Below are positions 1 to 54,111 of a stretch of 64,000 nt of DNA, one piece after another (position 1 is the first letter of the stretch; every line of letters begins with the position of its first letter). Both the position numbers and the translations under genes were made by a program. The stretch spans positions 1 to 64,000 of the IMG/VR virus record IMGVR_UViG_3300035145_003993; one strand, written 5' to 3'. Under the pieces are notes generated by a model. It was not told the DNA's origin. It worked only from the letters and a program-made list of their open reading frames with translations, and did no database searches.

Positions 1-304
1 AGAATCACATGCAGGTCAAGTAGTTGAGTGCATCCCATCAGATGATGTAGTTTGTGAAGAAACCGTCGAAGAAACTGTTGAAGAAACTGTTGAAGAAACT
101 GTTGAAGGAGTAGAAGATGCAGGTCTTCCTGAAGAAGTAGAAGCTGGTGTAGAGGAATCTACTGAAGAACCTATTGAAGAAGTAGAAGCTGGTGTAGAGG
201 AATCTACTGAAGAACCTATTGAAGAAGTAGAAGCTGGTGATAATCAATCAGATTCTGGAGATCCAGAAATTGATCCTGCTCCTCAAGCTGGCGAGCCTGG
301 TTAA
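1..304 (+). CDS. 3' end of an acidic, repeat-rich protein (partial; missing from the ORF track)
   Basis: Frame 2 is open from nt 2 to TAA at 302-304: ESHAGQVVECIPSDDVVCEETVEETVEETVEETVEGVEDAGLPEEVEAGVEESTEEPIEEVEAGVEESTEEPIEEVEAGDNQSDSGDPEIDPAPQAGEPG*. Repeat units are multiples of 3. Confidence 0.85.
   Translation, partial: ESHAGQVVECIPSDDVVCEETVEETVEETVEETVEGVEDAGLPEEVEAGVEESTEEPIEEVEAGVEESTEEPIEEVEAGDNQSDSGDPEIDPAPQAGEPG
56..106 (+). repeat. 12-bp tandem repeat (GAAGAAACTGTT, about 4 copies, encodes EETV)
   Basis: Directly visible; the first copy is degenerate (gaagaaaccgtc). Confidence 0.9.
131..239 (+). repeat. 45-bp perfect tandem repeat, about 2.4 copies (EEVEAGVEESTEEPI)
   Basis: 131-175 is identical to 176-220, with a partial copy at 221-239. 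Confidence 0.95.
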
Positions 305-542
305 TATATTTTATTTTATTTTTGCGGTTTAACTGCTTAAATTTATATTCAATTTTTAAAGCGTTGGAGTGATCCAACGCTTTTTTTATATACACAAATC
401 GACATGGTCTTTTACTTCTCGTATATTTAGCTCCACCTTTAATAACACCATTATGCTGTTTTAATCTTCTTTCAAGATTTGTAGTTATACCGCAATAAAA
501 AGAATTGTCATTACAGATTAACACGTACATATACCATTTCAA
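216..542 (-). CDS. GIY-YIG nuclease, SLX1/UPF0213-like
   Basis: YMYVL..DNSFYCGITTNLERRLKQHN..GAKYTRSKRP..ALKIE motifs; TTG start with AGGAGG RBS at 550-555. Confidence 0.9.
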   Translation of the reverse strand: MKWYMYVLICNDNSFYCGITTNLERRLKQHNGVIKGGAKYTRSKRPCRFVYIKKALDHSNALKIEYKFKQLNRKNKIKYINQARQLEEQDQFLDLQNLIDYHQLLLLQ

Positions 543-1164: not shown

Positions 1165-1695
1165 CTATTTAATTTTATAATATTTTTCTTTTGATATTGT
1201 AGGACTAAAAAATGTTAATCGATTTCCTTCGATATCTATGACTTCAAAAGAAGTGTCTCCCCAAGAATTGTCTTCAAGAGGACCTATTTGAATATTTTTT
1301 TTAGAAAACTTGTCATGTAATTTATGAACAGAACTAACTCTTAAAGACAAAGAAACATTGCCATAAAAGTTTTTGTTATACTTGTGAAAAGTTCCATTTT
1401 GGTTGTAAAGTTCAATAATGTTTCCTCCAATATCAAACATCGTTCCTTCACTTCCTTGACTTCTCCAATAGTGAACAACAGGAAACTCTAAAAACTTATT
1501 ATAAAACTTAACCATTTCTTCCATACTTTTGACATAAATATGAACTCTTACTTCTTTAGAATATGCATTCCAACTTTTTCCTAAATCTATATTTAATTCT
1601 TTTGCAGCATCAATAGCAGATTTAGAAGGTGCAGTTTTATTTTTGCTTGTCTTTTTAGAATTTTTATCATTTTGCTGATTGAAAAAACTTGTCAT
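1165..1695 (-). CDS. VOC (glyoxalase/bleomycin-resistance) family protein with basic N-terminal extension
   Basis: VHIYVKSMEEMVKFYNKFLEF..IIELY..LSLRVSSV..GPLEDNSWGDTSFEVIDIEGNRLTF is the typical paired beta-alpha-beta-beta-beta VOC pattern. Confidence 0.85.
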   Translation of the reverse strand: MTSFFNQQNDKNSKKTSKNKTAPSKSAIDAAKELNIDLGKSWNAYSKEVRVHIYVKSMEEMVKFYNKFLEFPVVHYWRSQGSEGTMFDIGGNIIELYNQNGTFHKYNKNFYGNVSLSLRVSSVHKLHDKFSKKNIQIGPLEDNSWGDTSFEVIDIEGNRLTFFSPTISKEKYYKIK

Positions 1696-1698: not shown

Positions 1699-2091
1699 TT
1701 ATCTTCTTTCTCTTTTTTCCCCGCCTAAAGGATATTGTAACCACGCATAAGGTTTTCTATTATCAATATAATCTTCTAAATTATCACAGTTCCATGCTTC
1801 TTGTTCAAACCTAATAGATAAGTAAGACTCTCTAGAAAAGCCTTTTCTGCATATAATAGATGACCAAATATAATCAAATAAATATATAATTAAAAAACCA
1901 ATAAAAAATAATTCCTTGTATTGTAAATAATGAATTGTTTCGTGTCTTTTAGTTTTTTCTTCTAAAGTTCCTCGACAAAATATCCAAGGCCCTAAAGTTA
2001 TTGCCCAAATATCAATTGGAGCAAATTTACTTAAAATAACTGGAATTTTACTGTTTTCATAAAATTTTGGGTATTTCACTTTATTTTTCAC
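1699..2091 (-). CDS. small HExxH zincin-like protein (DUF4157-like) with a hydrophobic segment
   Basis: AITLGP..RHETIHYLQ..FEQEAW; GTG start. Confidence 0.7.
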   Translation of the reverse strand: MKNKVKYPKFYENSKIPVILSKFAPIDIWAITLGPWIFCRGTLEEKTKRHETIHYLQYKELFFIGFLIIYLFDYIWSSIICRKGFSRESYLSIRFEQEAWNCDNLEDYIDNRKPYAWLQYPLGGEKRERR

Positions 2092-2287
2092 TTAAATCAT
2101 CAATATCTTCAGTTGGTTGTGGATTTTCACCTTCAAGGTCTTCATCTTTAGGAGGATTACCTTCAGGGGGCATTTCTTCTGGGTCAGTCATTGTTTTTCT
2201 AGATTCATCATTAAGTGAACTTTCTTCGTTACCTTCATTGATAAATCTTCTCCAAGCTTCCATAATTAGTTTTGTATCATTGTTCAT
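2081..2287 (-). CDS. small acidic protein, candidate internal head protein
   Basis: ATG at 2287 is preferred over TTG at 2299. MNNDTKLIMEAWRRFINE is followed by a disordered E/D/P tail; TATAATTA lies upstream. Confidence 0.65.
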   Translation of the reverse strand: MNNDTKLIMEAWRRFINEGNEESSLNDESRKTMTDPEEMPPEGNPPKDEDLEGENPQPTEDIDDLSEK

Positions 2288-2313
2288 AGTAAATCTCAAC
2301 TTAAATTATATTA

Positions 2314-2321
2314 TAATTATA
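2314..2321 (-). promoter_or_regulatory. putative late promoter TATAATTA
   Basis: Recurrent intergenic octamer, one mismatch from the T4 late promoter TATAAATA. Confidence 0.4.
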
Positions 2322-2359
2322 CTCAATTCAATTAAAGTTATTTTTTATTAATCGAATAC

Positions 2360-2383
2360 AAAAAAACCAGCAAAAGCTGGCTT
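2360..2383 (-). terminator. intrinsic terminator downstream of the major capsid gene
   Basis: Minus strand reads AAGCCAGC-TTTT-GCTGG-TTTTTTT. Confidence 0.85.
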
Positions 2384-2387
2384 GATG

Positions 2388-2411
2388 TCATCTTATAATA
2401 TTTTAAGATGA
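2388..2411. repeat. 24-bp near-perfect palindrome in the gp23 3' UTR
   Basis: TCATCTTA-T-AATATT-T-TAAGATGA, with a single T/T mismatch. Confidence 0.75.
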
Positions 2412-2433
2412 TAATCTATCAAAAGAACTTATC

Positions 2434-4242
2434 TTAGATAATGTTCATATCAAGACATGTTACTGTACCGTAGAAATCAGCACGTACCATCTTCTTACCG
2501 TAACGAGTCATAACACCCTTACGTGGTGTGAAATCCTCTGGCTGGAAGATTGTAGGTGTAACGATCAATGGAACGTATGGAGCATAAACGAAACCAGTCT
2601 CTAGGTAAGAACCACCCTTATAACCAACAAGGATCTTGTTGCGTGGGAAGTATGGGTCTTTGTAAACTGTGAAACGATTACTTAGTGTACCAACTTTGTC
2701 TGCACCCATTGTGAAAGGAGCACCAACTTGACCATCACCATCAATGCTATAGCTTGGACGATAAAGAACAGAAGCTTCAAGGATTGTTGCAACATCAGGA
2801 GAAACTACGATGAAGTTAGCAGAACCACGAAGTGTCTTTCTGTGAATCTCATTAGCAACGTCAATAACAGTCTCAGTTAGAGTCTCATACCACTCACGAA
2901 CAGTACCAGTAAATGCTGGTCCAGGATTAAGTGTAGATGTACGCGCGATCTCAGCACCAGTACGCTTGTTAACAAACTTACCAGGTGAACGACTCCAGAA
3001 GAAGTTAGCACCTTGTGCACCATTTAGAAGATCTCCAAGAATCTCACGATCGATTTCAAGAGCGATTTGCTCAGAAAGAATCTGAGTAAGCTCAACCTCT
3101 GCATCCATTGAGTGGTATGCATTAAGGTCTTGTGCAAGCTCTGGACTCCAACGTGCTCTCAACTTGCGTGTTTGTGCTGTTACAGGGATTGACTCAATCT
3201 TAATATCAATCTCTGGAATTGCAGAAGGAGCATCAGTTGTTAGTAATGTCTGACCTTCCATTGCTGGATCAACATCTACACCACCAACACTATTTGCAAT
3301 ACCTTCAGCACCATCAGCTTCAACAAATTCAACAATGATACCATCAACATTACCACCATCAATTGTGAGTGCAGCAGTTGCAGGTACTGTAGCGTGAATC
3401 TGAACTAGGAAAAGAGCTCGATCTTGTACACCATTTGCATTAAGAGCACCAGCTTTGAAAGTTGCTAAAGTATCGCCAGTACCAACTTTAGTAACTTTTC
3501 TTACGTTGTGAGATAAACCACCTTGCAATTTTTGTGCCGCTGAAATTTGAACAGATTGAGCTGTTCCACCGTCATCCATAACTGCAGTTGCAGACTTAAT
3601 AAGAGAAAGATCAGCACCTGAAAGTTGAGTTGCATCTAACAATACAAATTGAAATGCTGATGTTGCTGCTGCGTCAATAACTTCTGAATCGTAATCGACT
3701 AGTGCAAGGTGAGTAGCATCAGTTGGATCAAATTTAGCAGTTGCTTGTACATTGCCATGTGCAACTGTTTCTGTTTTGTGCTCGCGAGAAAAACCGCTAC
3801 CTGCAAGATCATATTGACCACCAAGAGCATCAGCCCCACCTTGAATAGCCTTACCAGTAGGACCACCATAGATTGACTCAGTTGTTTGGTGAGGACCCTC
3901 TTGTGAACCGTATGTATAATCTAGATAAAATAGAAGACCACTTGGAAGACTCATTGGTTGAATTGAAACTAGTTCATTTGCAATAAGACCACCGAATACG
4001 CGACGAACGATTGGGAATGCAATGTTTGAGAAACCACCAACATCACCAGCATTCATTGTGCTGCTTTCGCGAAGAACTTGAGCAGCTTGATTCTCAAGAA
4101 GAGTAGCCATATTTTCGCGGTTTACATCATCCATACCACGAAGAAGACCAGTGCGAGACCATTTCTCAACGAGGCGCTTGTTTTGTTGGCCCACGTGGCG
4201 GTCTCTAATACCTTCAGTTAACTTTTGTAGTGTAAAACTCAT
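2434..4242 (-). CDS. gp23: major capsid protein, T4 gp23-like
   Basis: LVEKW..LLENQ, FPIVRRVF..ELVSIQPM..PSGLLFY, TRKLRARWSPELAQDLNAYH..DAEVELT..LSEQIALEIDREI, GFVYAPYVPL, FTPRKGVMTRY; AAGGA RBS. Confidence 0.98.
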   Translation of the reverse strand: MSFTLQKLTEGIRDRHVGQQNKRLVEKWSRTGLLRGMDDVNRENMATLLENQAAQVLRESSTMNAGDVGGFSNIAFPIVRRVFGGLIANELVSIQPMSLPSGLLFYLDYTYGSQEGPHQTTESIYGGPTGKAIQGGADALGGQYDLAGSGFSREHKTETVAHGNVQATAKFDPTDATHLALVDYDSEVIDAAATSAFQFVLLDATQLSGADLSLIKSATAVMDDGGTAQSVQISAAQKLQGGLSHNVRKVTKVGTGDTLATFKAGALNANGVQDRALFLVQIHATVPATAALTIDGGNVDGIIVEFVEADGAEGIANSVGGVDVDPAMEGQTLLTTDAPSAIPEIDIKIESIPVTAQTRKLRARWSPELAQDLNAYHSMDAEVELTQILSEQIALEIDREILGDLLNGAQGANFFWSRSPGKFVNKRTGAEIARTSTLNPGPAFTGTVREWYETLTETVIDVANEIHRKTLRGSANFIVVSPDVATILEASVLYRPSYSIDGDGQVGAPFTMGADKVGTLSNRFTVYKDPYFPRNKILVGYKGGSYLETGFVYAPYVPLIVTPTIFQPEDFTPRKGVMTRYGKKMVRADFYGTVTCLDMNII

Positions 4243-4282
4243 ATGTTTTATCCTTTATAATTCTTAAATAATTAAATTGTTT

Positions 4283-5800
4283 TTATTTTCTAATACCAGC
4301 AAGAGTTGCCCAACGATCAAGTGCTACAGATTCGTTAATTGGCTTTGCTTGACCACTACGAACTGAGTTTGAAGAAGAACTAGAAGATCTTCTTAGTGCA
4401 CCTTCAGATAGGTTACTATTACGGGATGCCTTACTACTTACAAGCGACTTTGAAAGACTTTCAAATAGAATCTTAGCCTCACCAATAGTCTTTGCTTCAT
4501 CAAGAGATTCAACAATGTTGCGTTGTTGCTTCATTGACAAATCACGATTTTGCATGAGTTTGTTAGCATAAAGTAACTTCGCGTTGAATAGGTTCATTTC
4601 TGAAAGATGAGTCTTCATTCCTTGAAGAGCCTCTTTGTATTGAGAAAGCTTGCTTTCTAGCATACGATTCGTGCGTACAACTTTTGCAGCTTTAGTTTTC
4701 ATCTCTTGAAGCTTGTCTACACCATCAACAAAAGCTTCACCTTCTTCAGAACCACCACCAAATTGTGAAGCTATATCTTTAGCTTCACCTTCACGAAGAG
4801 ATTTCATTCTACCAATCTCTCTTCTAAGCATATTTTCATCAATTTCTAAAACACGGTCAAAAGACTCAGCTATTTCTTCTGGGCCATCTTTAACTTCATC
4901 TTCATCTTCATCTAAGTGAGTTCCTTCATAAGCTTCTTTTTGCTCATGATCATCCTCAAACAAACCTTCAAGATTAAGTTCTTGTTGGCCAACATCTTCG
5001 TCTTCTTCTACAAGACCTGCCATGATAGCTAATTCTCTAACTGTCGTAAGATCTGTAACTTCGTCACCAGATTCTTCAGCTTCTTCAACTTCTTCAGCTT
5101 CTACTTCAGATTCTTCCTCATTTTCAGGTTTAGGATCTTCATCAGCAGCTAAAAGATCTGCGTCATCGTCTTCTTTTACTTCGTCAGCTTCGAAAAGATC
5201 AATCTCTAGGAGATCGTCAAAGCTTTCGTTAAGATACTTTTTGTTTGAGTGTCTACTAGACATATTCTCTAACTCCTTATTTAATTTATAAAATTCTTCT
5301 AAAAGTTCTTTGTTATTTCTAATTATACCGTTTTTGTTCAATTTTGCTATTTCATTAACTAAATTCTTATATAATACTATAATTCTAGGTTTATTTACGC
5401 TATATTTATCTGAACTTTCTGAAAGAATTATAGCTTTTTGTAAAGAGTTAATACTTTCTTTCAAATCAGATATTTTTTGTTTTGCAGCTTGAATTCTAGA
5501 ATTTTGACTAATTAATTTATTAAGAATTCTTCTAGATTCTTGATTAAGCTCAACAGGTTTTGAATCTTCTTGTTCAGTTTGTTCTTCTTTGACTTCATCT
5601 TGAGATTCTTCTTTAATAGATTCATATGAGCAATCATCTTGACTTGTTAATTCTTCATCTGATTCAAAAAGTTTTTTCTCTACCATAATTTTAATTTGTG
5701 GTGAAATAGACTCAATTATTTGTTGTTTTACTTTTTCTTCAGCAGATAACTTTATTTGTTCTGCTGCTTCAATTGCTTCGTTATATAATGTACTACTCAT
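4283..5800 (-). CDS. gp22: prohead core/scaffolding protein, gp22-like
   Basis: Immediately upstream of the major capsid gene; highly acidic coiled coil with many L/I-x-E sites; LSEMNLFNAKLLYANKL; C-terminus DRWATLAGIRK. Confidence 0.8.
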   Translation of the reverse strand: MSSTLYNEAIEAAEQIKLSAEEKVKQQIIESISPQIKIMVEKKLFESDEELTSQDDCSYESIKEESQDEVKEEQTEQEDSKPVELNQESRRILNKLISQNSRIQAAKQKISDLKESINSLQKAIILSESSDKYSVNKPRIIVLYKNLVNEIAKLNKNGIIRNNKELLEEFYKLNKELENMSSRHSNKKYLNESFDDLLEIDLFEADEVKEDDDADLLAADEDPKPENEEESEVEAEEVEEAEESGDEVTDLTTVRELAIMAGLVEEDEDVGQQELNLEGLFEDDHEQKEAYEGTHLDEDEDEVKDGPEEIAESFDRVLEIDENMLRREIGRMKSLREGEAKDIASQFGGGSEEGEAFVDGVDKLQEMKTKAAKVVRTNRMLESKLSQYKEALQGMKTHLSEMNLFNAKLLYANKLMQNRDLSMKQQRNIVESLDEAKTIGEAKILFESLSKSLVSSKASRNSNLSEGALRRSSSSSSNSVRSGQAKPINESVALDRWATLAGIRK

Positions 5801-5812
5801 ATTTAAAACCTG

Positions 5813-5820
5813 TATTTATA
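5813..5820 (-). promoter_or_regulatory. T4-type late promoter TATAAATA upstream of scaffold/capsid genes
   Basis: Exact T4 late consensus in the 33-bp gap. It lies only 12 nt from the ATG, so the leader would be very short. Confidence 0.4.
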
Positions 5821-5833
5821 TAATTTATATATT

Positions 5834-6709
5834 CTATAATTTTTTATTTTTGTTTAAAACATTATATTTATCATTAAAATTTTGATTTGTTGTTTGTAAC
5901 AATATATCAAAAGATGATAAATCTTCGTCATAAAAATCATCAATAAGTATTTCTGAGGATGAAGATTTAACAGTTTCTGCACCGTCAGTTGTACCTTTCA
6001 TTGGAACTTTAACATGTCCATGAGGAGTTTTAATATAAACATTGATTTCTTCTTGATCATGTCCTTTATAATTAAAACCATGTCTACCTTTAGGGAGATG
6101 GCCAACAGGAGCAGCATCTGCTGTATTTGTTGATACATTCATGTTTTTATAAATACTATCTTTTCCAGTAGATCTAACAACAATATTACCACTAATTTGG
6201 TTACCTCTTTCAGACAATATTAATTCTTCAATATATTCCTTAAGACTGTTTTCTAACAATTTGTTTCCTTTAACTTCGTAACCGGCTGATAATCCTATTA
6301 CACCTGCAATACTATTTCCTAAACCACCTAAACTTGAAATGTCTGTTCCTCTATGTGCTAAGGAATCTGTTGCTCTTCTTTGAAAAGATGTATGAGCTTT
6401 TGACTCAATATCTGCATCTAATTCATCATATGGATTGTCTGCTTCAGTTTCTATTAGACCTGCTAAAATTGCTAATTCTCTAACTGTTGTATTAGAAGTT
6501 ATTTGTATTATTTCTTGTTTGTCTTCTGGAATTTCATAATCATATTCTCCTTTTGGAGAACTTAATGCATCACCCATATTCCAGTTTCTACCAATACCAC
6601 TATTAGGATCACCACCTAAAGACCCTATACTTAAACCTGTCCTACTGTCATAATTAAATGATCCACCGAATGAGTTAGGATTTGAATTAGAAAAAGTAGG
6701 ACTAGTCAT
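5834..6709 (-). CDS. hypothetical head-module protein sharing the TTVRELAIxAGLxE motif with the scaffold
   Basis: 291-aa ORF with AAGGA RBS; motif is 12/14 aa identical to the scaffold copy. Confidence 0.8.
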   Translation of the reverse strand: MTSPTFSNSNPNSFGGSFNYDSRTGLSIGSLGGDPNSGIGRNWNMGDALSSPKGEYDYEIPEDKQEIIQITSNTTVRELAILAGLIETEADNPYDELDADIESKAHTSFQRRATDSLAHRGTDISSLGGLGNSIAGVIGLSAGYEVKGNKLLENSLKEYIEELILSERGNQISGNIVVRSTGKDSIYKNMNVSTNTADAAPVGHLPKGRHGFNYKGHDQEEINVYIKTPHGHVKVPMKGTTDGAETVKSSSSEILIDDFYDEDLSSFDILLQTTNQNFNDKYNVLNKNKKL

Positions 6710-6718
6710 TTAAATTCC

Positions 6719-7288
6719 TTAAGGTTGCTTATAGTCAATATTCGGATCTTCAGATGGACTCTTTGCTTCGCCTAAAATTGGTAAAGAAACAGATGTATCA
6801 TTACCAGAAGAATTATAGTGTCGACTAAAATATGTTCCTATTGTTGAGGCTGGACTTAAAGGTTCATTACGATCATCTCTCCAACCAAAACCTTTATTTT
6901 GTCTATCTTCAGGAATTGTAGCTTGATTTTCAGTAGGTGCTGATAGGTTGTTAATGTCAGGTGAAATTAGATTAGGGCCTTTTTTATTAGGTTGGTCTTT
7001 AGCGTTTTGTAAATCATCAAACATACTTTCAGAACCACTATGAGTAAAATCTAGATGAGGAACAAAATCAGGATTTCCTAATTCAGATCTTAAATCTAAT
7101 TCTTTCATTGTATCTGTTGAAGCTTCTAAAACTTCTTGACTTCTATCAGGAAAAACAGACTGACTAGTGTAAACGCCCATTTCGCTAATACTACCACCTT
7201 TATAGGCTTCTCTTTGTCTTTTTATTTGTTCATTAAATGACGTAGCATTAACGAAATCATTAGCTCCTGATTTTCTATATCCAGCCAT
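6719..7288 (-). CDS. hypothetical head-module protein (polar, Pro-rich)
   Basis: 189-aa ORF with AAGGA RBS. Confidence 0.8.
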   Translation of the reverse strand: MAGYRKSGANDFVNATSFNEQIKRQREAYKGGSISEMGVYTSQSVFPDRSQEVLEASTDTMKELDLRSELGNPDFVPHLDFTHSGSESMFDDLQNAKDQPNKKGPNLISPDINNLSAPTENQATIPEDRQNKGFGWRDDRNEPLSPASTIGTYFSRHYNSSGNDTSVSLPILGEAKSPSEDPNIDYKQP

Positions 7289-7319
7289 AATAAAATCCTT
7301 TCAGAAATAAAATATGATA

Positions 7320-7607
7320 TTATATACCTTTAATTATTCTTCTTCTAAGTTCTTTTTTAACTTCTTGAAGTCTTTTTAGTTCTTCAATCATTTTTGATTC
7401 TTTAATTTTACAAGCTTGATAATAATTCATGCATTTCGAAAGAGAATCAGCAAGATCAGATGCTTCAACCTCTTTGACTTTTTTAATAACTTGTGATGGA
7501 TGTGAAGCTTTTAACTCTAAAGTTTCATTCATACGTTGTCTTTCTTCACTCACCATTTCTTTAATAAGTTCAGGTGTAACCTTAATAACTTTATCTGTAT
7601 TAGACAT
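7320..7607 (-). CDS. hypothetical coiled-coil head-module protein
   Basis: 95 aa with GGAG RBS; N-terminal KVTPELIKEMVSEERQRMNE helix. Confidence 0.8.
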   Translation of the reverse strand: MSNTDKVIKVTPELIKEMVSEERQRMNETLELKASHPSQVIKKVKEVEASDLADSLSKCMNYYQACKIKESKMIEELKRLQEVKKELRRRIIKGI

Positions 7608-7643
7608 AATTTATCTCCATATAATACTAAATTTTATATTACA

Positions 7644-7651
7644 TAATTATA
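7644..7651 (-). promoter_or_regulatory. putative late promoter TATAATTA
   Basis: Recurrent intergenic octamer. Confidence 0.4.
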
Positions 7652-7691
7652 TCTATATGAGTAAAATTTAAATTGTTTTTAATTTAATATT

Positions 7692-8117
7692 TTATTTCTC
7701 AGAAAAAGCTAAGTTTGCCCATTTGTCTGCTGAACCTGAAAACATCTCCATAGGATCAGACTCGTTTACAACTTGACTATATGTATCAGATGGTTTTGCT
7801 GTAAATTGATTTGGTCTATCAGCACCATTTTGCTCTTGTAAAGTTGTTTTTGCAGTATCTTGAAGAATTGATGCCATTATTGGATCACTTGTTGTTTGAG
7901 ATATTATTTTATTTGTATTGTCTTCAAATTTTTCGTTTACTATTTTTTTAGATATTTGTGAAGACATTGTATCTTGTTTAAAATTATTTGCAGAATTTGT
8001 TGAAATAAGACTTTCATTTAATGAAGATGTATCTCCACCACTAAGACCTTCAGCTAACAGTTCTACTAAACACTCTTTTACAATGCTCTTAAGCATACTT
8101 CTACTTACTTTTGCCAT
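7692..8117 (-). CDS. hypothetical head-module protein with a scaffold-like C-terminus
   Basis: N-terminus MAKVSRSMLKSIVKECLVELLAE; C-terminus DKWANLAFSEK resembles scaffold DRWATLAGIRK. Confidence 0.8.
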   Translation of the reverse strand: MAKVSRSMLKSIVKECLVELLAEGLSGGDTSSLNESLISTNSANNFKQDTMSSQISKKIVNEKFEDNTNKIISQTTSDPIMASILQDTAKTTLQEQNGADRPNQFTAKPSDTYSQVVNESDPMEMFSGSADKWANLAFSEK

Positions 8118-8122
8118 ATTAA

Positions 8123-8671
8123 TTAATCACCTAAAAATGTTTCTACAACTTCTGTAAATTCTGATCTGTCGATTGATGTTAATCCTACAATTATTTTTCC
8201 ATTTTGTTTTGTATCAAAATATAGATTTGTACATCTTATTTCAAGTTGACTAGAACTAGAAGTAAATGTTAAAAAATTATCTAAAAGAATATCAGTTCTT
8301 GAAAAGGCTACATCTATACCATCACCTGTTGGTAAAAATTGAATCCATCTAGATATTTTTGGTAGTTTTAAAGTTTTTACTTCAACCAAGGTAAAACCTG
8401 CTTTTAAATTGTTTGCCTTTTTTTCGCTATCTTGAATTACTCCATCACCGCTAGTATCAGTAAATATATCTGTATCTGGAACAACACCATGTGTATGAAC
8501 AAAACCATTATTTGTCTCTGAGTGTCCTACAACAGCAGAATTATCATTTTTTTTGACAAAAAATGTACTAACTAGATCTGATGAAAGATCTACGACATAC
8601 GGTATAGAACTAATTTGGTATTCTGGAGTAAAATTATGACCTACTGATCTTGGGATATGAGATATCGACAT
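8123..8671 (-). CDS. beta-rich hypothetical protein, tandem paralogue B (possible capsid decoration protein)
   Basis: MSISHIPRSVGHNFTPEYQISSIPY...GLTSIDRSEFTEVVETFL; paralogous to the next gene. Confidence 0.8.
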   Translation of the reverse strand: MSISHIPRSVGHNFTPEYQISSIPYVVDLSSDLVSTFFVKKNDNSAVVGHSETNNGFVHTHGVVPDTDIFTDTSGDGVIQDSEKKANNLKAGFTLVEVKTLKLPKISRWIQFLPTGDGIDVAFSRTDILLDNFLTFTSSSSQLEIRCTNLYFDTKQNGKIIVGLTSIDRSEFTEVVETFLGD

Positions 8672-9084
8672 TAAGGTTGTCCTTCCAAGAATGTTTCTAC
8701 TACAGAAGTAAATTCTGATCTGTCTATAGCTGTTAGACCTGCTAATATTTCTAACGTTTTCCCATCATCAACATCGTTAAAATATAAATTAACACATCTA
8801 ATATGTAAAGGATATGTCCTATTCGTATCTAAAGTCATCCCATTACTACCAGCTGCAGCGTCTTTAGCACTAAAATAAACGGAAAGAATAGCATCAGCTT
8901 TAAATTGAAGCCACTGTGTTATTTTAGGAAATTCAACAACATAAACTGTACTACCGTTTACAGTTAAAGGAGAATTATTGTCATAGGTATTAATCACACC
9001 ATCTCTTGTATAAGGAATAGCACTAATTTGATATTCAGGTAAAAAATTATGACCTACTGATCTTGGAATATGTGATATTGCCAT
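8671..9084 (-). CDS. beta-rich hypothetical protein, tandem paralogue A
   Basis: Start at ATG 9084 (TAATG overlap with the gp21 stop) aligns with the paralogue: MAISHIPRSVGHNFLPEYQISAIPY...GLTAIDRSEFTSVVETFL. Confidence 0.8.
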   Translation of the reverse strand: MAISHIPRSVGHNFLPEYQISAIPYTRDGVINTYDNNSPLTVNGSTVYVVEFPKITQWLQFKADAILSVYFSAKDAAAGSNGMTLDTNRTYPLHIRCVNLYFNDVDDGKTLEILAGLTAIDRSEFTSVVETFLEGQP

Positions 9085-9686
9085 TATTTCCACTCCATTA
9101 TGTCATTAAATATTCTATCTATTCTGTCTGTTTTGTTAAATACGTTATTTATAAACTGGGGAGAAACTTCTTTTCCTTCTTTCATCATAAACGCACCAGG
9201 AGTTGAAGGCTCACTTACAAAATCCCAACAAATAAGTTGAAAATCATCTTGTACAATTTGCATATCACCTTGAATTTTTGTACTTCCAACGCCTCTAGAA
9301 GAAATTCCTAATGTTACTCCACTTTCAACTAATGATTGTAATATTTTTCCACTAGGAGTATTAAGAATTTCAACTACACCATAGACAATATTACCTTCCA
9401 TATACGCTTGTTTAATATTATGTGAAGCATTTTTTAATTCAACAACAGAAGAATCTGGATGGTCTAGTTCACCTAAAGCTCTATTTTCTTTAATAAACTT
9501 TTGATAATTTCTTATTTCTCTTTCTAGAATATTCCTTGGATAAACTCTTCCATTCTGATTTAAAGTTTCAGCTTTTTGTAAAATACCTTTCATGATTAAA
9601 GGCTTACCTAGATCTTTTTGTTCTTTAATTAATTTAGGATCGTATTCAAAATTAACCCATTCTGTAATAAGTCTTTGAGCACCCAT
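9084..9686 (-). CDS. gp21: prohead protease, T4 gp21-like
   Basis: GILQKAETLNQNGRVYP, ALGELDHP, ASHNI, TPSGKIL, LGISSRGVGS, DFVSEPSTPGA. Confidence 0.97.
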   Translation of the reverse strand: MGAQRLITEWVNFEYDPKLIKEQKDLGKPLIMKGILQKAETLNQNGRVYPRNILEREIRNYQKFIKENRALGELDHPDSSVVELKNASHNIKQAYMEGNIVYGVVEILNTPSGKILQSLVESGVTLGISSRGVGSTKIQGDMQIVQDDFQLICWDFVSEPSTPGAFMMKEGKEVSPQFINNVFNKTDRIDRIFNDIMEWK

Positions 9687-9687
9687 T

Positions 9688-10518
9688 TTATTCTCCTGAT
9701 ATTTCTTCTTTTAATTTTCCGATTGTTAAAAATCTTTGAAGATTTTCTTTTGACATATCATTACAATCTAAATCTTTAATGTTATTAACAACAAAGCTAT
9801 ATTTTTCATTTAAAATTTGATTGTTACAATCACTAATATAATTTTCAAGAATATTAATACAAGATATTTTTATTGCATTATATTTATTTGAAAGAGAATC
9901 TTCATTGTCTTTTATAAAAAAAGATATCATTTCTCTTTGCGATTCATTTAATTTAGAGTTATATTTTTTCTCAAACATTTCATTCATAATCTTATATGTA
10001 AGAGAATCAACTTTTTTTGGAATAATATTTTCTTTTATTAATTCTTTTTTACTAGTTAAGCTTTCATGTAATTTAATTTCATATTCAGTTACTTTGTCAA
10101 AACTTGGATTTTTATTTCTCCATTCATTCAACAAAGTCTGAATTGTTGCATATGTTCTATAATTTTTAATTTTTCCTTCGAAAATATTGCCTTTTCCAAA
10201 AGTATAGTTTAAGTCTTTAATTAAAAAGGATTTTTCTTCTTCTAATTTTTTATTATCAAACATATGATTACAAGCTTTTTTAGCTTCATTAATAATTGAA
10301 GTAGCTAAAGTTTCTGAAACATTGGAAGTTTCAGAAAGAGCTTTAAAAAGTTTATATTCTTTAAATAATTGTGTATCTTGCTTAAAATTTTTCTTTATTA
10401 TATTAATTGCAAGTTCGGCGCTTTTTTTATCATCTTCCATTAGTCTTTCACAAACAAAGTTTATAATTTGTTCATATATTATACCAATGTTTCTTTTTTT
10501 ATTATGATTCTTCGCCAT
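9688..10518 (-). CDS. helical head-assembly protein between portal and protease (prohead-core position)
   Basis: Probable start ATG 10518 (MAKNHNKKRNIG). It occupies the slot of T4 gp67/gp68 and carries several L/I-x-E sites. Confidence 0.75.
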   Translation of the reverse strand: MAKNHNKKRNIGIIYEQIINFVCERLMEDDKKSAELAINIIKKNFKQDTQLFKEYKLFKALSETSNVSETLATSIINEAKKACNHMFDNKKLEEEKSFLIKDLNYTFGKGNIFEGKIKNYRTYATIQTLLNEWRNKNPSFDKVTEYEIKLHESLTSKKELIKENIIPKKVDSLTYKIMNEMFEKKYNSKLNESQREMISFFIKDNEDSLSNKYNAIKISCINILENYISDCNNQILNEKYSFVVNNIKDLDCNDMSKENLQRFLTIGKLKEEISGE

Positions 10519-12499
10519 TGTTATCTTCCTTGTTTTCAAACATATCATCGTCTATAATTATATCAAAATCTTTGTCATTATTTTCTTTTAATAACTTATT
10601 TTTACTTAAATTTAAAGAATTAGACATTTTTTCTAAATCTTTTGACATTCTATAAGAAAGTTGTCTATCTACAAAATCATTAATTAAAGGACTTTGTGGA
10701 AGAATATTATCTGATAGTGAAGATCTAAAAACATCTTCAGAATTTGCTATTTTTATAGGCTTATTTATTCCACTACCTGATGATAAACCTGGTAAAGTTG
10801 TTTGTGACTTTCCTTTTTTTGATCCTTTTCTTTTAAATTTCCCTCTAGTTTTAGAAACTTTAGAATCAGCTTGGACAGGGTTTTCTTTATCTGGATCAAA
10901 AATATCTTTAGAGTCAAATTCTATTAAGTCATCAAACTCAGATAGATCTTTTTCTGTCATTATATTATTACCTTTTATTTCTCCTGAAAATAGATCTGAA
11001 ACAGGAGATTCATCTTCAACATCTGGGGCAGATGCTCCAGATCCAATGTCACCAGAAGACTGATCTGAGTCATCACCAAATATATCATCTTCAGTTTCTG
11101 GTAATTGTAAACCTTCAAGCTCCATTTCTCGGATTTTATCTTTTTCTCTTCCCATTTCAATTCTTGTAATTTCATCATCATTTAAATCAAGAATATGTTT
11201 TCTAATCCATTCTCTATCAACAAAACCTTCAGGAGCTCCTCCTGCTATTTCAAATTTGGTTCTTATTAACTCCAGTTTTTGTTGTTGAGCAATACTTGAT
11301 GGATTACATAATTTTAATTCAAAGTCTAATATAGATTCATCTGTATATCCGTGTGAATATAAATGAATCATTGCAATTTTATTTAATTCTGAAACTATTG
11401 TTTTTTGTATTCTTTGAATTGTTCTACTAAATCTAACATCTTCTTGAGCTAATGTAGCTTTTGATCCAATATCTTCATCATATCCAAGATATGCTTTTGG
11501 AATTTTAAGAGCTGCAAAAAGTTTCTTTTGAATATATTCAACATCTTCAATAGCTGTTGTATTTGATCCACCAGCCAAAGTATCAATTCTAGTTCCACTT
11601 TCTCCACCTCTTACTGGAAGGAAATAATCTTCATCAACTGATAGTGGATTATATCTTAAATCAACTTGTCCAGTATTTTTATCTACAACAGCATTTCTTT
11701 TTAAAGAAGATTGAGCTTGTTCAAGATAATCGGAAATATTTTCTGGAGGAATATTACCAACATCAATATAAAAAACTCTTCTTTCTGGAGATCTAATTAC
11801 TCTATATACAAGCATTGCATCTTCAATAAGAATTAGCTGACGCCAGACTCTTCGAGCACCTTCTAAAACAGAAGATCCATATGGTAAAAAAGCATCACTT
11901 CCTAAAAGTCTAAAATGAGACACTTGCCAATTTTCTAAAACCCTATTTCCTTGAGTTACCCATCTAAATCTTACAGCCCCTGGATCATTTGGATCAAAAC
12001 CTTCTTCTCTTTCTATTTCTGATATTGGTATTGGAAAAACGTTAACGACACCAAATTCAGGATGAATATCATTAAAAAGAAAAAAGTCTCCATATTTACA
12101 TAAATTTCTAACCCACATAGAAAGATTAAAATCTATATTAAGCGTATCATAAAATAATTCATCTAATATTTTTTTAATCATTCTATTTTCAGAGTAAATA
12201 TTTAAAATATTACCTTCTACATCAGGTGAAGCACATTCTTCAGAGTATATATCTAAAGCAGAAGAAATCTCTGGAGTTCCTTCCATCTCTGAAAAATCAG
12301 AATATCTTGACATTCTATCATATGATCCATAGGCTCTTAAAGTACTATTGTAAACATCACTATGTGCTTTTTTAAATACTTCTAAAGAAGATTTAGAGTA
12401 AGACTCTTTATCTTGTATCTTTTTAATTCTTCTTTTAACTACAGGACCTGATCTAAAAAGGTCTGTTAATTTTTTAAATAAATTATTATTTTCTGCCAT
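10502..12499 (-). CDS. gp20: portal protein, T4 gp20-like, with long charged C-terminal extension
   Basis: PEISSALDIYSEE, QLILIEDAMLVYRVIRSPERRVFYIDVGNIP, EDYFLPVRGGESGTRIDTLAGG, IEDVEYIQKKLFAALKIP. Confidence 0.97.
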   Translation of the reverse strand: MAENNNLFKKLTDLFRSGPVVKRRIKKIQDKESYSKSSLEVFKKAHSDVYNSTLRAYGSYDRMSRYSDFSEMEGTPEISSALDIYSEECASPDVEGNILNIYSENRMIKKILDELFYDTLNIDFNLSMWVRNLCKYGDFFLFNDIHPEFGVVNVFPIPISEIEREEGFDPNDPGAVRFRWVTQGNRVLENWQVSHFRLLGSDAFLPYGSSVLEGARRVWRQLILIEDAMLVYRVIRSPERRVFYIDVGNIPPENISDYLEQAQSSLKRNAVVDKNTGQVDLRYNPLSVDEDYFLPVRGGESGTRIDTLAGGSNTTAIEDVEYIQKKLFAALKIPKAYLGYDEDIGSKATLAQEDVRFSRTIQRIQKTIVSELNKIAMIHLYSHGYTDESILDFELKLCNPSSIAQQQKLELIRTKFEIAGGAPEGFVDREWIRKHILDLNDDEITRIEMGREKDKIREMELEGLQLPETEDDIFGDDSDQSSGDIGSGASAPDVEDESPVSDLFSGEIKGNNIMTEKDLSEFDDLIEFDSKDIFDPDKENPVQADSKVSKTRGKFKRKGSKKGKSQTTLPGLSSGSGINKPIKIANSEDVFRSSLSDNILPQSPLINDFVDRQLSYRMSKDLEKMSNSLNLSKNKLLKENNDKDFDIIIDDDMFENKEDNNGEES

Positions 12500-12502
12500 G
12501 TT

Positions 12503-14137
12503 TTATTTTCCTACTAACCAACTAAGATCTCCAAAAGGATTATTTTTTGTTGGTTTATTATTTTTTTTACCACTAAAATTATTTTGTGGCATAAAAACAG
12601 GTACAAAAGGATTCACACTGTTTTGTTTATTATTATAAAAAGGAGAAACAGCAGTGTTACTAATATTTGTATTATTTACTTCCATTCCTTTTAAAATAGC
12701 ATCTGCTTGCTGCATTTGAGTAACATTATAAGTATTCGAATTACTATCTGCTAACCAGCATCCTATAGCTAAAGACATAATTAAGTCGTCATTATAACCT
12801 TTCATTGCAGTTATTTTTTTACCATTCCAGATAAAAGTTTTTAATTCTGAATATAGTCTTTGTGAATATGACTTAATTCTTCCGTTTCTTAAACTTTCTT
12901 CAAGGTTAGCTAATATTTTATCTCTACTCTCTTTAGAAGTAGTAAATCCAGCTTTAGCTATATTATTTGCATCTCCGTACAAATATTGATACTTTTCTTT
13001 TTCTTTTGAAAAGTATATATTTTTATAACCTAATTCTGCTAATTTAACTAGCATTGTATATCCATACGCATTATTTTCAGGACAAACCATAGCATTATAA
13101 AATCTTTTAGATATGTCATATACTAAAGATGCAAATTGATCAGGTGGTATTTTTCCTTTAAATTCGCAAGCAATTGACATATCTTTGTTATTAATAACAT
13201 GGAATGCTGAATAGTCTCCACTATCACCACGTGCAATATCGCATGACATAGTATAAGTAACAGATTCAATTGGATATTCCCAATACCAAACATTGTTTCC
13301 GGGCCCGCTTTTTTCAATCGGACTCTTTGTTAGAACTCTTAAATTTTCTAAAACGTCATTAGATAAAAAAGTATCACCTGAAGATGCGAAGTCACATAAA
13401 AGCTCTTGAGAAACCTGCTTTTTAGACATATTTTTAGTTTCTTTATCAAACCAATCATCGTCTCTTTCCGGGTGAACATCCCACATTAACTTAATAGGAT
13501 TAAATTTATTTTCTTTTCTTTCAGCCTTTGTATATATTTCATGATATTGTCCACCAACACCATTAGGTGTTGATAACAAAATAGCACGTCCACCTGTTGA
13601 TAGTGTAGGATAAAGACCCATCCATAATTCGTCAAAATTTCTTACAAAAGCAGCCTCGTCTACAATTAACAAAGAAAGAGCTTCAGAACGACCTGCATCT
13701 TCAGATGTAGGTACAGCTTTAATTTGTGATCCATTTGAGAATTCAACTTGTTGCTTGTTATTAGCAGTGATTACTGGAACTAATAACCATTTAGGCATTG
13801 ATTTTATATACGTTTTTACTTTTCTAATAAAGTTTTGTGCAACTGCTAATTTAGTAGCAATAATAAGAATGTTTTTTTCTTTATAAAAAACTGCTTGCCA
13901 AACAGCATAAGCAGCAACTAATGTTGACAATCCTAACTGACGAGATTTTAAAATAATGTTAAATCTATGATCATTAAAATCTTTTACACAATCATCTTGA
14001 AAAGGAAAAGTATTAAATCTAATTAATCCTTTTAAAGGGTGTTGGATTTTAAGGTATCTATTCATAAAATAAACTGGGTCTTTACCACATTTAATTATTT
14101 CTGAAATTTGACCATTTTTTGATTTAACATTAGCCAT
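12503..14137 (-). CDS. gp17: terminase large subunit, T4 gp17-like
   Basis: CGKDPVYF, Walker A KSRQLGLST, Walker B LLIVDEAAF, STPNG, nuclease DIARGDSGDYS and NDDLIMS. Confidence 0.97.
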   Translation of the reverse strand: MANVKSKNGQISEIIKCGKDPVYFMNRYLKIQHPLKGLIRFNTFPFQDDCVKDFNDHRFNIILKSRQLGLSTLVAAYAVWQAVFYKEKNILIIATKLAVAQNFIRKVKTYIKSMPKWLLVPVITANNKQQVEFSNGSQIKAVPTSEDAGRSEALSLLIVDEAAFVRNFDELWMGLYPTLSTGGRAILLSTPNGVGGQYHEIYTKAERKENKFNPIKLMWDVHPERDDDWFDKETKNMSKKQVSQELLCDFASSGDTFLSNDVLENLRVLTKSPIEKSGPGNNVWYWEYPIESVTYTMSCDIARGDSGDYSAFHVINNKDMSIACEFKGKIPPDQFASLVYDISKRFYNAMVCPENNAYGYTMLVKLAELGYKNIYFSKEKEKYQYLYGDANNIAKAGFTTSKESRDKILANLEESLRNGRIKSYSQRLYSELKTFIWNGKKITAMKGYNDDLIMSLAIGCWLADSNSNTYNVTQMQQADAILKGMEVNNTNISNTAVSPFYNNKQNSVNPFVPVFMPQNNFSGKKNNKPTKNNPFGDLSWLVGK

Positions 14138-54024: not shown

Positions 54025-54103
54025 TATAAATTACTTTCTTTTATTTTTATTATAAAATTTATTTTTGTAATTTATAAAAAAGTGTCAAATTAAAGTGACT
54101 AAG

Positions 54104-54111
54104 AATAATTA
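54104..54111 (+). promoter_or_regulatory. putative late promoter AATAATTA in the divergent intergenic region
   Basis: 41 nt upstream of ATG 54153. Confidence 0.35.

What the first reader, a model, noticed from the sequence alone, without database searches (positions are those of the whole stretch)
2081..10518. Candidate peptide-tag system for loading proteins into the capsid
Seen: otherwise unrelated small proteins around gp21-gp23 carry a similar amphipathic helix ending in hydrophobic-x-E. These are KLIMEAWRRFINE (2081 gene, N-terminal), MLKSIVKECLVELLAE (7692), ELIKEMVSEERQRMNE (7320), SLKEYIEELILSE (5834), and IKIMVEKKLFE and MLRREIGRMKSLRE (scaffold). Known: T4 internal proteins IPI-III enter the prohead via a ~10-aa N-terminal capsid targeting sequence ending (I/L)-x-E, which gp21 removes. 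Inference: this lineage uses a different, longer family of helical tags to recruit orphan cargo into the prohead core and release it by gp21 cleavage.
Basis: partly seen in the sequence, partly recalled or inferred. Interest (0 to 1): 0.8.

Follow-up and report, generated by a model that had tools for sequence, protein, structure and literature searches.

The report
Capsid-loading peptide tags on phage proteins
In the head-assembly genes of an uncultured marine T4-like phage, three small proteins start with short helical leader peptides, and two proteins end with the same tail, that recur on dozens of unrelated proteins in related phages; they most likely act as address labels for packing proteins into the capsid, extending a mechanism known from phage T4.

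Summary
All six quoted peptides are at the stated places, but they are not one family, and hydrophobic-x-Glu alone is everywhere (129 sites in 12 head proteins).

The three N-terminal peptides (genes at 2081, 7320, 7692) are real, recurring leaders. Profiles trained only on leaders of an unrelated ParB-like protein family from other phages pick out gene 2081 (E 9e-7) and gene 7320 (E 0.008). These three are the best N-terminal matches among all window proteins. In that family, 91 different leaders of 7-45 residues all end in hydrophobic-x-Glu exactly where the conserved body starts (Glu in 101 of 104).

The three internal peptides (scaffold twice, gene 5834) are conserved Glu sites, probably protease sites, not tags.

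The genome has a T4 gp21-type protease (39% identical), a gp23-type capsid protein and a gp20-type portal.

Best reading: T4-style capsid-targeting leaders of new, longer classes, plus a tail that mimics the scaffold. No cleavage or packaging has been shown. This is a new variant of a known kind.

The parts
9084..9686 (-). Prohead protease, T4 gp21 / peptidase S77 family. Its N-terminus carries I-T-E at residues 7-9 (9660-9686), matching the T4 gp21 L-I-E-9 self-cleavage site.
   Evidence: Pfam PF03420 1.2e-28. PHROG head maturation protease 6e-50. 39% identity to T4 gp21 over 152 residues, including GELDHP and SSRG. T4 N-terminus read.
7692..8117 (-). 141-residue conserved core-module protein with three conserved blocks joined by variable linkers. 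It has both an N-terminal leader and a scaffold-like C-terminal tail.
   Evidence: Orthologues in 68 of 80 related loci. 425 unnamed homologues, seen in marine metagenome sources such as Tara. Invariant residues L9 K10 K14 E15 E19 E23, D87 T88 A89 T92, W133 A137 F138. No relation to T4 gp67 or gp68.
8049..8117 (-). Leader of the 7692 protein, residues 1-23, ending L-A-E before G. Class A type.
   Evidence: h-x-E-[G/S] is kept in all 59 distinct orthologues. AlphaFold helix at residues 6-25, followed by a disordered stretch 26-63. Best ungapped match in the whole window to class A leaders of the ParB-like family (score 39, shuffle P 5e-5). The profile test on the window copy is not significant (E 3.5), but one orthologue (L076) passes at E below 0.01.
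7695..7727 (-). C-terminal tail of the 7692 protein (D-K-W-A-N-L-A-F-S-E-K), a variant of the scaffold tail.
   Evidence: W133, A137 and F138 are invariant in the family. After the scaffolds and two accessory proteins, these are the next hits of the scaffold-tail profile. All lie within 11 residues of the C-terminus and rank ahead of any reversed control, though none is individually significant.
7320..7607 (-). 95-residue conserved core-module protein: N-terminal leader, acidic middle, basic helical C-terminus.
   Evidence: Orthologues in 62 of 80 loci.
7524..7607 (-). Leader of the 7320 protein, residues 1-28, ending M-N-E before T. Class A type.
   Evidence: The class A leader profile, trained on another family, hits residues 13-28 at E 0.0076 and ends exactly at the Glu. 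Second-best N-terminal score in the window. A profile of this leader finds non-orthologous small proteins downstream of the capsid gene in relatives, while the best reversed control has E 3.
2081..2287 (-). 68-residue protein (ATG start at 2287): an 18-residue class B leader followed by a poorly conserved acidic tail. Its architecture resembles T4 gp67.
   Evidence: The three orthologues conserve only the leader. T4 gp67 has helices, then L-I-E before G, then an acidic tail.
2234..2287 (-). Class B leader (Trp helix) of the 2081 protein, ending I-N-E before G.
   Evidence: The class B profile, trained on the ParB-like family, hits it at E 9e-7 and ends at the Glu; the next window hit has E 1.9. 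The same leader sits on 10 distinct protein families of 68-388 residues by the profile, always N-terminal, with no reversed hits. The pattern scan adds a 582-residue bearer.
4283..5800 (-). Acidic 505-residue scaffold protein, in the position of T4 gp22.
   Evidence: Lies between the core genes and the capsid gene, and is conserved in 58 loci. BLAST against T4 gp22 is not significant. h-x-E sites are preferentially conserved: 10 of 33, against 4 of 40 control triplets.
4286..4342 (-). Scaffold C-terminal tail: I-N-E before S, then a spacer, then D-R-W-A-T-L-A-G-I-R-K at the very end (4286-4318).
   Evidence: The tail is present at the C-terminus of the full-length scaffold orthologues (27 distinct variants). 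It is also found in the isolated Flavobacterium phage immuto. The tail pattern occurs 68 times in real proteins, 0 times in reversed ones and 1.8 times in shuffled ones.
5003..5047 (-). Internal copy of the tail motif in the scaffold (T-T-V-R-E-L-A-I-M-A-G-L-V-E-E).
   Evidence: Found only in the closest sub-clade, largely the same phages that carry the copy in gene 5834. The pattern occurs 70 times in real proteins, 0 in reversed and 1.45 in shuffled.
6449..6490 (-). The same internal motif in the 291-residue protein of gene 5834 (5834-6709).
6209..6247 (-). Not a terminal tag.
   Evidence: The neighbouring I-E-E site is conserved in 89% of orthologues; the final L-S-E falls below the 75% cut-off used.
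5663..5695 (-). It holds a conserved h-x-E site (M-V-E, 98%), a probable protease site.
4790..4831 (-).
6767..6781 (-). Conserved I-L-G-E before A near the C-terminus of the 189-residue protein of gene 6719 (6719-7288), a probable protease site.
   Evidence: 80% conserved.
2434..4242 (-). Major capsid protein, T4 gp23 family. The predicted propeptide is residues 1-59 or 60 (4066-4242), ending V-L-R-E before S.
   Evidence: Pfam PF07068 5e-80. The L-R-E site is 97% conserved. It lies 18 residues before the segment that aligns with T4 gp23 residue 98; T4 is cut at L-T-E-65.

Best explanation
The region is the prohead-core module of a distant T4-like marine phage. It encodes a gp20-type portal, a gp21-type protease, a gp22-like scaffold, a gp23-type capsid protein and six lineage-specific small proteins.

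Three of the small proteins start with a short helical leader:
- Class A: K-h-S/T-x3-L-K/R-x-h-h-x-E-E...h-x-E, on genes 7692 and 7320.
- Class B: h-h-x-E-x-W-R-x-F-h-x-E, on gene 2081.

In related phages the same leaders sit on many unrelated proteins. They always end in hydrophobic-x-Glu at the start of the mature body.

A second label is the scaffold's own C-terminal tail (R-W-A-x-L-A-G-I). It also ends the 7692 protein and several unrelated accessory proteins in relatives.

Proposed mechanism:
1. The leader docks the protein into the assembling scaffold core, as the 10-residue T4 capsid targeting sequence does.
2. The tail docks it wherever the scaffold's tail docks, probably the inner face or propeptide of the capsid protein.
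3. Once the shell closes, the gp21-type protease cuts after the Glu. This frees the mature part and lets the peptides leave.

Shown: the gene families, the recurrence and position of the leaders and tails, and the conserved junction. Inferred: docking, cleavage and packaging.
For: Gene families:
- Protease, capsid protein, portal and terminase are of T4 type.
- The protease is 39% identical to T4 gp21 and keeps the residue-9 self-cleavage site.

T4 reference, read from the record and from papers:
- IPII and IPIII start with the same 10 residues, ending I-A-E. gp24 is cut after L-R-E-10 and gp23 after L-T-E-65.
- Only the first 10 residues are needed for targeting; residues 8 and 10 govern processing (PMC9026906).

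Independent family test:
- A ParB-like accessory protein lies next to the capsid gene in relative L041. It has 596 homologues.
- Among 104 parsed homologues there are 91 distinct leaders of 7-45 residues upstream of one conserved body start. P1 is Glu in 101 of 104, and P3 is L/I/V/M/F in 100 of 104.
- Profiles built only from those leaders hit gene 2081 (E 9e-7) and gene 7320 (E 0.0076) in the window. Both matches end at the Glu.
- The three best N-terminal 21-mer scores among about 47 window proteins are genes 7692, 7320 and 2081 (39, 37, 34; the next is 23).

Breadth, over 2788 proteins of 160 related loci:
- Class A: 50 forward hits, 0 reversed. Of these, 37 are N-terminal and fall in 27 body families.
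- Class B: 23 forward hits, 0 reversed. All are N-terminal and fall in 10 body families.
- Pairs of genes in one locus that share only their first 25 residues: 85 real against 2 reversed at score 35 or more.

T4-style cassette:
- One Tara contig (L089) carries seven unrelated genes, including an Fe/Mn superoxide dismutase. Six share one 9-10 residue leader ending L-x-E; the seventh carries a longer form of it.

Tail:
- It is present at the C-terminus of the full-length scaffold orthologues. It also sits at the C-terminus of three unrelated accessory families in the protease loci.
- In the ParB-like loci, scaffold and cargo carry it in the same locus. C-terminal pair scores of 40 or more: 29 real against 1 reversed.

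Structure:
- The 7692 leader is a confident helix ending at the cleavage motif, followed by a disordered stretch.
Against: - No experimental data exist: no virion proteome, no neo-N-termini, no packaging assay.
- The window copy of the 7692 leader is not significant by profile (E 3.5). A broader class A profile found nothing.
- The h-x-E at the junction could be part of the folded body rather than a cut site.
- Genes 7692 and 7320 are conserved core genes, so their 'leaders' may be structural parts of the core.
- In several class B proteins the first h-x-E lies 10-15 residues after the helix.
- Upstream of the cargo tails, the Glu-Ser/Gly site lacks a hydrophobic P3.
- The binding partner of the tail is unknown, and no multimer model could be run.
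- Only 64 kb of a 211 kb genome was visible. Enrichment in late genes against early genes could not be tested.
Confidence: 0.6

Rival explanations
1. The shared termini are built-in assembly helices of scaffold-like core proteins. They would be oligomerisation or shell-contact elements that are structural parts of the core, not removable address labels. The h-x-E sites would serve only to clear the scaffold, as in T4 gp22, gp67 and gp68.
For: - Genes 7692 and 7320 are syntenic and nearly universal in the clade.
- The 7692 protein has three conserved blocks joined by linkers, like a mini-scaffold.
- The scaffold itself carries the tail and an internal copy of it.
- The class A helix also occurs at C-termini (11 of 50 hits).
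- h-x-E sites are preferentially conserved within the scaffold.
Against: - The same leaders and tails sit on enzyme-like proteins that are unlikely to be scaffold parts. Examples are the ParB-like protein, the P-loop protein and the Fe/Mn superoxide dismutase with the short leader.
- Within one orthologous family the leaders are swapped between classes while the junction stays fixed.
Confidence: 0.2
2. The resemblance is compositional chance. Helical, Glu- and Lys-rich proteins of an AT-rich genome produce many hydrophobic-x-Glu helices.
For: - There are 129 h-x-E sites in 12 proteins.
- Five of the six quoted peptides have a low hydrophobic moment.
- The 7692 leader profile finds nothing else in the window.
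Against: - Reversed-sequence controls give 0 hits, against 50 and 23 forward hits.
- 60 of the 73 hits start within the first 20 residues, and 11 more lie at C-termini.
- The junction Glu is kept in 101 of 104 leaders.
- The three flagged proteins are the top three of about 47 in an independent ranking.
Confidence: 0.05
3. The leaders are real modules but serve another purpose, such as membrane or assembly-site localisation, chaperone binding, or control of stability. They would have no link to the prohead protease.
For: - Many bearers are encoded far from head genes.
- No function is known for most bodies.
Against: - In T4 the internal-protein genes (ipII, ipIII) also lie about 35 kb from the head genes in the record.
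- The leaders end in the specificity motif of the protease family that these genomes encode.
- In the window all three bearers lie inside the head module.
- The C-terminal label is literally the scaffold's own tail.
Confidence: 0.1

Closest known systems
Phage T4 capsid targeting sequence (CTS) of internal proteins IPI-III and Alt, removed by gp21
   Same: - An N-terminal leader shared by otherwise unrelated proteins.
- The leader ends in hydrophobic-x-Glu at the start of the mature protein.
- The genome encodes a gp21-family protease, a gp22-like scaffold and a gp23-type shell.
- Bearer genes can lie far from the head genes.
- The short 9-10 residue leaders on contig L089 are of T4 length and pattern (PMC9026906, PMC5694885).
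   Different: - The window leaders are 18-28 residues long and fall into two sequence classes with no detectable similarity to the T4 CTS.
- In the window they sit on conserved core-module proteins rather than on variable basic internal proteins.
- Targeting and cleavage are untested here.
Long propeptides of head and ejection proteins in giant phages (phiKZ, 201phi2-1, SPN3US), cut by gp21-like proteases
   Same: - Diverged gp21 homologues cut after Glu.
- Propeptides longer than in T4 are thought to target proteins into the prohead.
- N-termini are conserved between diverged paralogues (PMC5694885).
   Different: - The giant-phage motif has a small residue at P3 (S/A/G-x-E), and the propeptides often exceed 100 residues.
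- Here P3 is hydrophobic as in T4, and the leaders are short, sharply defined modules shared across many families.
Docking tails at scaffold C-termini, and their reuse: herpesvirus protease and scaffold sharing one capsid-binding tail; P22 scaffold C-terminus used to load cargo; encapsulin cargo-loading peptides (from general knowledge, not tested here)
   Same: - A short C-terminal peptide identical to the scaffold's own tail is found on other proteins. This is the logic by which those systems bring passengers into a shell.
- A Glu site a few residues upstream of the tail in the scaffold would release the body, like the herpesvirus maturation site.
   Different: - I found no description of this for T4-like phages. 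The 2023 T4 review calls core localisation 'mysterious' (PMC9958956).
- The binding partner is unknown.
- The sequence motif is different from those systems.
T4 prohead core proteins gp67 and gp68
   Same: - Small proteins encoded beside the protease and degraded with the core.
- gp67 has helices, then L-I-E before G, then an acidic tail, like the 2081 protein.
- gp68 has 141 residues, like the 7692 protein.
   Different: - Profile comparison shows no homology (probability 0.1%).
- The gene order differs: here these genes lie after the protease, not before it.

Membership tests
T4-type capsid targeting leader (CTS) processed by a gp21-family protease | The genome encodes a gp21 / peptidase S77 prohead protease. 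| tested here: met
   PF03420 1.2e-28. 39% identity to T4 gp21. The residue-9 self-cleavage motif is kept.
T4-type capsid targeting leader (CTS) processed by a gp21-family protease | The leader lies at the extreme N-terminus. | tested here: met
   Genes 2081, 7320 and 7692 carry it within residues 1-28. 37 of 50 class A hits and 23 of 23 class B hits start within the first 20 residues. Not met for the peptides in gene 5834 and the scaffold, which are internal.
T4-type capsid targeting leader (CTS) processed by a gp21-family protease | The same leader is shared by otherwise unrelated proteins. | tested here: met
   27 body families for class A and 10 for class B, with 0 reversed hits. There are 37 leader-only pairs within single loci, in 26 loci. 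Leaders are swapped within one orthologous family.
T4-type capsid targeting leader (CTS) processed by a gp21-family protease | The leader ends in (L/I)-x-E at the junction with the mature protein. | tested here: met
   P1 is Glu in 101 of 104 and P3 is hydrophobic in 100 of 104 in the ParB-like family. L-A-E is invariant in the 7692 family. Gene 2081 has I-N-E and gene 7320 has M-N-E.
T4-type capsid targeting leader (CTS) processed by a gp21-family protease | About 10 residues long and similar in sequence to the T4 IPII/IPIII leader. | tested here: not met
   The window leaders are 18, 23 and 28 residues long and show no similarity to the T4 leader read. Only the leaders on contig L089 have T4 length.
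T4-type capsid targeting leader (CTS) processed by a gp21-family protease | The leader is sufficient for incorporation into proheads and is removed by the protease. | not testable with these tools
   This needs proteomics or fusion experiments.
Passenger loading by a tail that mimics the scaffold | The peptide is identical in type to the scaffold's own conserved C-terminal end. | tested here: met
   The scaffold tail is present in the full-length orthologues. The same motif lies within 1-3 residues of the C-terminus of three unrelated accessory families. Scaffold and cargo carry it in one locus. The 7692 tail is a variant: its rank and position support this, but its individual E-value is not significant.
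Passenger loading by a tail that mimics the scaffold | The tail binds the capsid protein or another shell component. | not testable with these tools
   Only single-chain structure prediction was available.
T4 gp67 / gp68 prohead core proteins | Sequence homology to gp67 or gp68. | tested here: not met
   hhalign probability 0.1% for the 7692 family against both. No PHROG or Pfam hit.
T4 gp22 scaffold | Sequence homology to gp22. | tested here: inconclusive
   BLAST E 2.2. Position, acidity and size fit. The gp22 C-terminus (aromatic-A-x-h-A-small) resembles the tail by eye only.

The most novel reading that the evidence does not exclude
Marine T4-like phages may use a combinatorial, two-ended address code. 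It would combine at least three classes of cleavable N-terminal leader with a C-terminal tail that mimics the scaffold. With it they would pack a changing set of enzymes into the capsid for delivery with the DNA. Candidates seen here are a ParB-like protein, a P-loop protein, an Fe/Mn superoxide dismutase and HAD-like proteins. The code could then be read directly from metagenomes to list capsid cargo. The shared tail would point to the long-unknown contact between scaffold core and shell.
Probability: 0.4. Interest if true: 0.8.

Novelty: new variant of a known kind. Interest (0 to 1): 0.7.

Why it matters
How proteins are placed in the T4 scaffold core is still called 'mysterious' (PMC9958956). 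The only defined signal is the 10-residue leader of IPII and IPIII.

- Sharply defined leader classes on dozens of unrelated proteins give many natural variants of such a signal to compare.
- A tail shared with the scaffold suggests a concrete, testable contact.
- If the labels work as proposed, they would identify capsid-borne, probably injected proteins of uncultured marine phages from sequence alone.
- They would also give new handles for loading foreign proteins into phage capsids.

I found no paper describing such leaders outside T4 and the giant phages. The library searched is limited.

Tried and rejected
- Profile of the 7692 leader against all window ORFs: no other hit (best E 1.2). 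The window tags are not mutually homologous by that test.
- Broad class A profile from 59 right-aligned leaders of mixed register: nothing significant. I rely instead on the 8-sequence profile and the ungapped ranking.
- Homology of the 7692 family to T4 gp67 or gp68: none.
- Scaffold against T4 gp22 by BLAST: none.
- Pfam and PHROG searches on ten tagged accessory proteins: essentially empty.
- The 'ParB-like' label rests on an invariant IMDGHHRW motif and on ESM Atlas neighbours with ParB_N or ParBc_2 at 0.84-0.85. That is a lead only. Pfam and the PDB sequence search were negative.
- Test of whether a cargo's tail type co-varies with its own phage's scaffold tail: three look-ups of homologues with a different tail found no head module nearby. 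This remains undecided.
- The ParB-like protein with a class B leader has no match in isolated phage genomes.
- Near-identical DNA of the region is absent from isolated phages.
- Fold search for the paralogue pair after the protease gave only weak cupin and CBM matches.

Full report
**What the region is**

The window is the end of a 211 kb IMG/VR contig. It is AT-rich (GC 0.20-0.39). Nearly all genes in the first 54 kb, including the whole head module, lie on the minus strand.

Bases 2081-14137 hold a T4-type head module:
- terminase (PF03237) and portal (Portal_T4, 5e-77)
- an unnamed 286-residue gene
- a prohead protease (peptidase S77, 1e-28)
- two small paralogues
- genes 7692, 7320, 6719 and 5834
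- an acidic 505-residue scaffold
- a gp23-type capsid protein (5e-80) and gene 2081

No isolated phage has similar DNA. The nearest capsid proteins belong to uncultured huge phages, Rhodothermus phage RM378 and Flavobacterium phage immuto, at 33-44% identity.

The protease is 39% identical to T4 gp21. It keeps I-T-E at residues 7-9, where T4 gp21 has the L-I-E-9 self-cleavage site (PMC9026906). The premise of a protease that cuts after hydrophobic-x-Glu is therefore reasonable.

**The observation**

As defined, though, the motif is weak:
- Hydrophobic-x-Glu occurs 129 times in the 12 head proteins.
- Only the gene 2081 peptide is strongly amphipathic: 0.73, against 0.18-0.35 for the rest.
- A profile of the 7692 leader finds no other window protein.
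- The 3-fold excess of amphipathic h-x-E 13-mers over shuffles (13 versus 4.3) would be expected of any helical Glu-rich protein.

**Conservation in 80 related loci**

- In the 7692 family (59 distinct sequences) the first 25 residues are the most conserved block. They end in an invariant h-x-E-G/S, followed by a hypervariable linker. Two more blocks follow, the last at the very C-terminus.
- AlphaFold gives a confident helix at residues 6-25, then a disordered stretch at 26-63.
- The 7320 family keeps K-L-T-P-x-x-L-R-K-h-V-x-E-E...h-x-E.
- Gene 2081 has three orthologues that share only the leader.
- In the poorly conserved scaffold, h-x-E sites are kept more often (10 of 33) than the control triplets E-x-h, h-x-D and h-x-K (4 of 40). 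They are probable cut sites, not tags.
- The gene 5834 peptide is an internal conserved helix.

**The decisive test came from another protein**

In relative L041 the gene after the capsid gene encodes a 311-residue protein with an invariant IMDGHHRW motif. I call it ParB-like, but only as a lead. It has 596 homologues.

In the 120 homologues I read, the conserved body starts at one point, and what precedes it varies freely:
- There are 91 distinct leaders among 104 parsed sequences, 7 to 45 residues long.
- They include class A leaders, class B Trp-helix leaders, long leaders, and 9-residue leaders of T4 type.
- All of them end in hydrophobic-x-Glu at the junction. Glu is present in 101 of 104, and L/I/V/M/F at P3 in 100 of 104.

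Profiles built only from these leaders were then run against every ORF of the window plus reversed copies:
- The class B profile hits gene 2081 at E 9e-7 (next best 1.9).
- The class A profile hits gene 7320 at E 0.0076.
- Both matches end exactly at the Glu.

In an ungapped comparison with six class A leaders, the three best N-terminal scores among about 47 window proteins are genes 7692 (39; shuffle P 5e-5), 7320 (37) and 2081 (34). The next best score is 23.

The window copy of gene 7692 is not significant by profile, but an orthologue is.

**Breadth**

Over 2788 proteins from the 80 protease loci, the 80 ParB-like loci and the window, the results were as follows:

| Profile | Forward hits | Reversed hits | N-terminal | Body families |
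|---|---|---|---|---|
| Class A | 50 | 0 | 37 (11 more at C-termini) | 27 |
| Class B | 23 | 0 | 23 | 10 |

- Within single loci, gene pairs sharing only their first 25 residues number 85 against 2 for reversed controls at score 35 or more. At score 40 or more, 37 pairs in 26 loci have unrelated bodies.
- One Tara contig (L089) carries seven unrelated genes. Six start with the same 9-10 residue leader ending L-x-E, and the seventh carries a longer form. One of them is an Fe/Mn superoxide dismutase whose domain begins at residue 17.
- That is the pattern of T4 IPII and IPIII, which share their first 10 residues.

- The scaffold ends in D/E-R-W-A-x-L-A-G-I/L plus one to four residues in every full-length orthologue. 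The same is true in the isolated phage immuto.
- The same motif lies within 1-3 residues of the C-terminus of three unrelated accessory proteins encoded right after the capsid gene in relatives.
- A variant (N-W-A-x-L-A-F) ends the whole 7692 family.
- The tail pattern occurs 68 times in real proteins, 0 times in reversed ones and 1.8 times in shuffled ones.
- In the ParB-like loci, scaffold and cargo carry it side by side. In L136, three consecutive unrelated proteins share it.
- An internal copy occurs in the scaffold and in gene 5834 of the closest sub-clade only.
- In the scaffold, an h-N-E site lies about five residues upstream of the tail. Cutting there would detach the body from a docked tail.

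**Interpretation**

The simplest account is a T4-style targeting system with new, longer leader classes, plus a tail that mimics the scaffold. The gp21-type protease would cut after the junction Glu.

This fits three points from the literature:
- T4 leaders of 10-19 residues target proteins to the core and are removed (PMC9026906).
- Alt is processed at both ends (same paper).
- Giant phages use longer propeptides (PMC5694885).

- The labels form several classes.
- Half of the quoted peptides are not labels.
- The window's bearers are conserved core components (genes 7692 and 7320) and a gp67-like acidic peptide (gene 2081, compare), not orphan cargo.

Nothing here shows cleavage or packaging.

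The main rival is that these termini are structural assembly helices of the core. The presence of the same termini on enzyme-like proteins, and leader swapping within one family, argue against it.

**Limits**

- Only 64 kb of the genome was visible.
- Motif patterns were partly designed after seeing the data, so I rely on the independently trained profiles.
- Single-linkage 'body families' may split distant relatives.
- The literature search covered open-access papers only.

Noticed in passing
window 8671-9093 and 8123-8671 (-): Two tandem paralogues lie directly after the protease, sharing a conserved N-terminal H-N-x-x-P-E-Y-Q-x-S motif. The AlphaFold model (pLDDT 78, pTM 0.72) is a small beta-sandwich. 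Only weak cupin and CBM29 matches were found in the PDB (TM about 0.3). Function unknown.
   Followed up: partly
window 9688-10548 (-): A 286-residue protein between portal and protease is conserved in all 80 related loci. By eye its N-terminus resembles that of gene 197 of Flavobacterium phage immuto. It has no Pfam hit.
   Followed up: no
window 1699-2091 (-): A 130-residue protein with an H-E-T-I-H (HExxH) motif and hydrophobic stretches is conserved downstream of the capsid gene in relative L022. It has no Pfam hit.
   Followed up: no
window 1165-1695 (-): A glyoxalase/VOC-fold protein (PF00903, 4e-7) carries an N-terminal extension of about 50 residues that is also kept in L022.
   Followed up: no
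window 38-542 (-): A GIY-YIG endonuclease gene (PF01541, 2e-18) lies at the end of the contig. Next to it is an ORF made of three copies of a 15-residue repeat, which is probably a DNA repeat rather than a gene.
   Followed up: no
window 54000-62000: GC content rises to 0.35-0.38, against 0.20-0.26 in the tail-gene region at 14-54 kb. The capsid and scaffold genes (2-6 kb) are also GC-richer (0.33-0.39).
   Followed up: no
L089:248-3923 and 10001-10822: A Tara contig carries seven unrelated genes. Six begin with one 9-10 residue leader (M-I/L-K-L-K-D/N-I/L-L-x-E), and the seventh carries a longer form. The set includes an Fe/Mn superoxide dismutase and a DUF2608/HAD-like protein. This would be a T4-style internal-protein cassette.
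   Followed up: partly
L136:7626-10915: Three consecutive proteins (386, 353 and 338 residues) with little body similarity share a nearly identical 13-residue C-terminal tail. It matches the tail of the scaffold encoded in the same locus.
   Followed up: partly
P0207, P0217, P0224 (homologues of L041:14306-15238): Some ParB-like homologues carry a class A helix at both ends. The class A helix therefore seems to work at either terminus.
   Followed up: no
L081:10118-10927 (T4 gene 22): T4 gp22 ends in aromatic-A-x-h-A-small (Y-A-K-V-A-S-R-F). By eye this is the same core pattern as the W-A-x-L-A-G-I scaffold tail of this clade. The tail may therefore be ancestral in T4-like phages.
   Followed up: no
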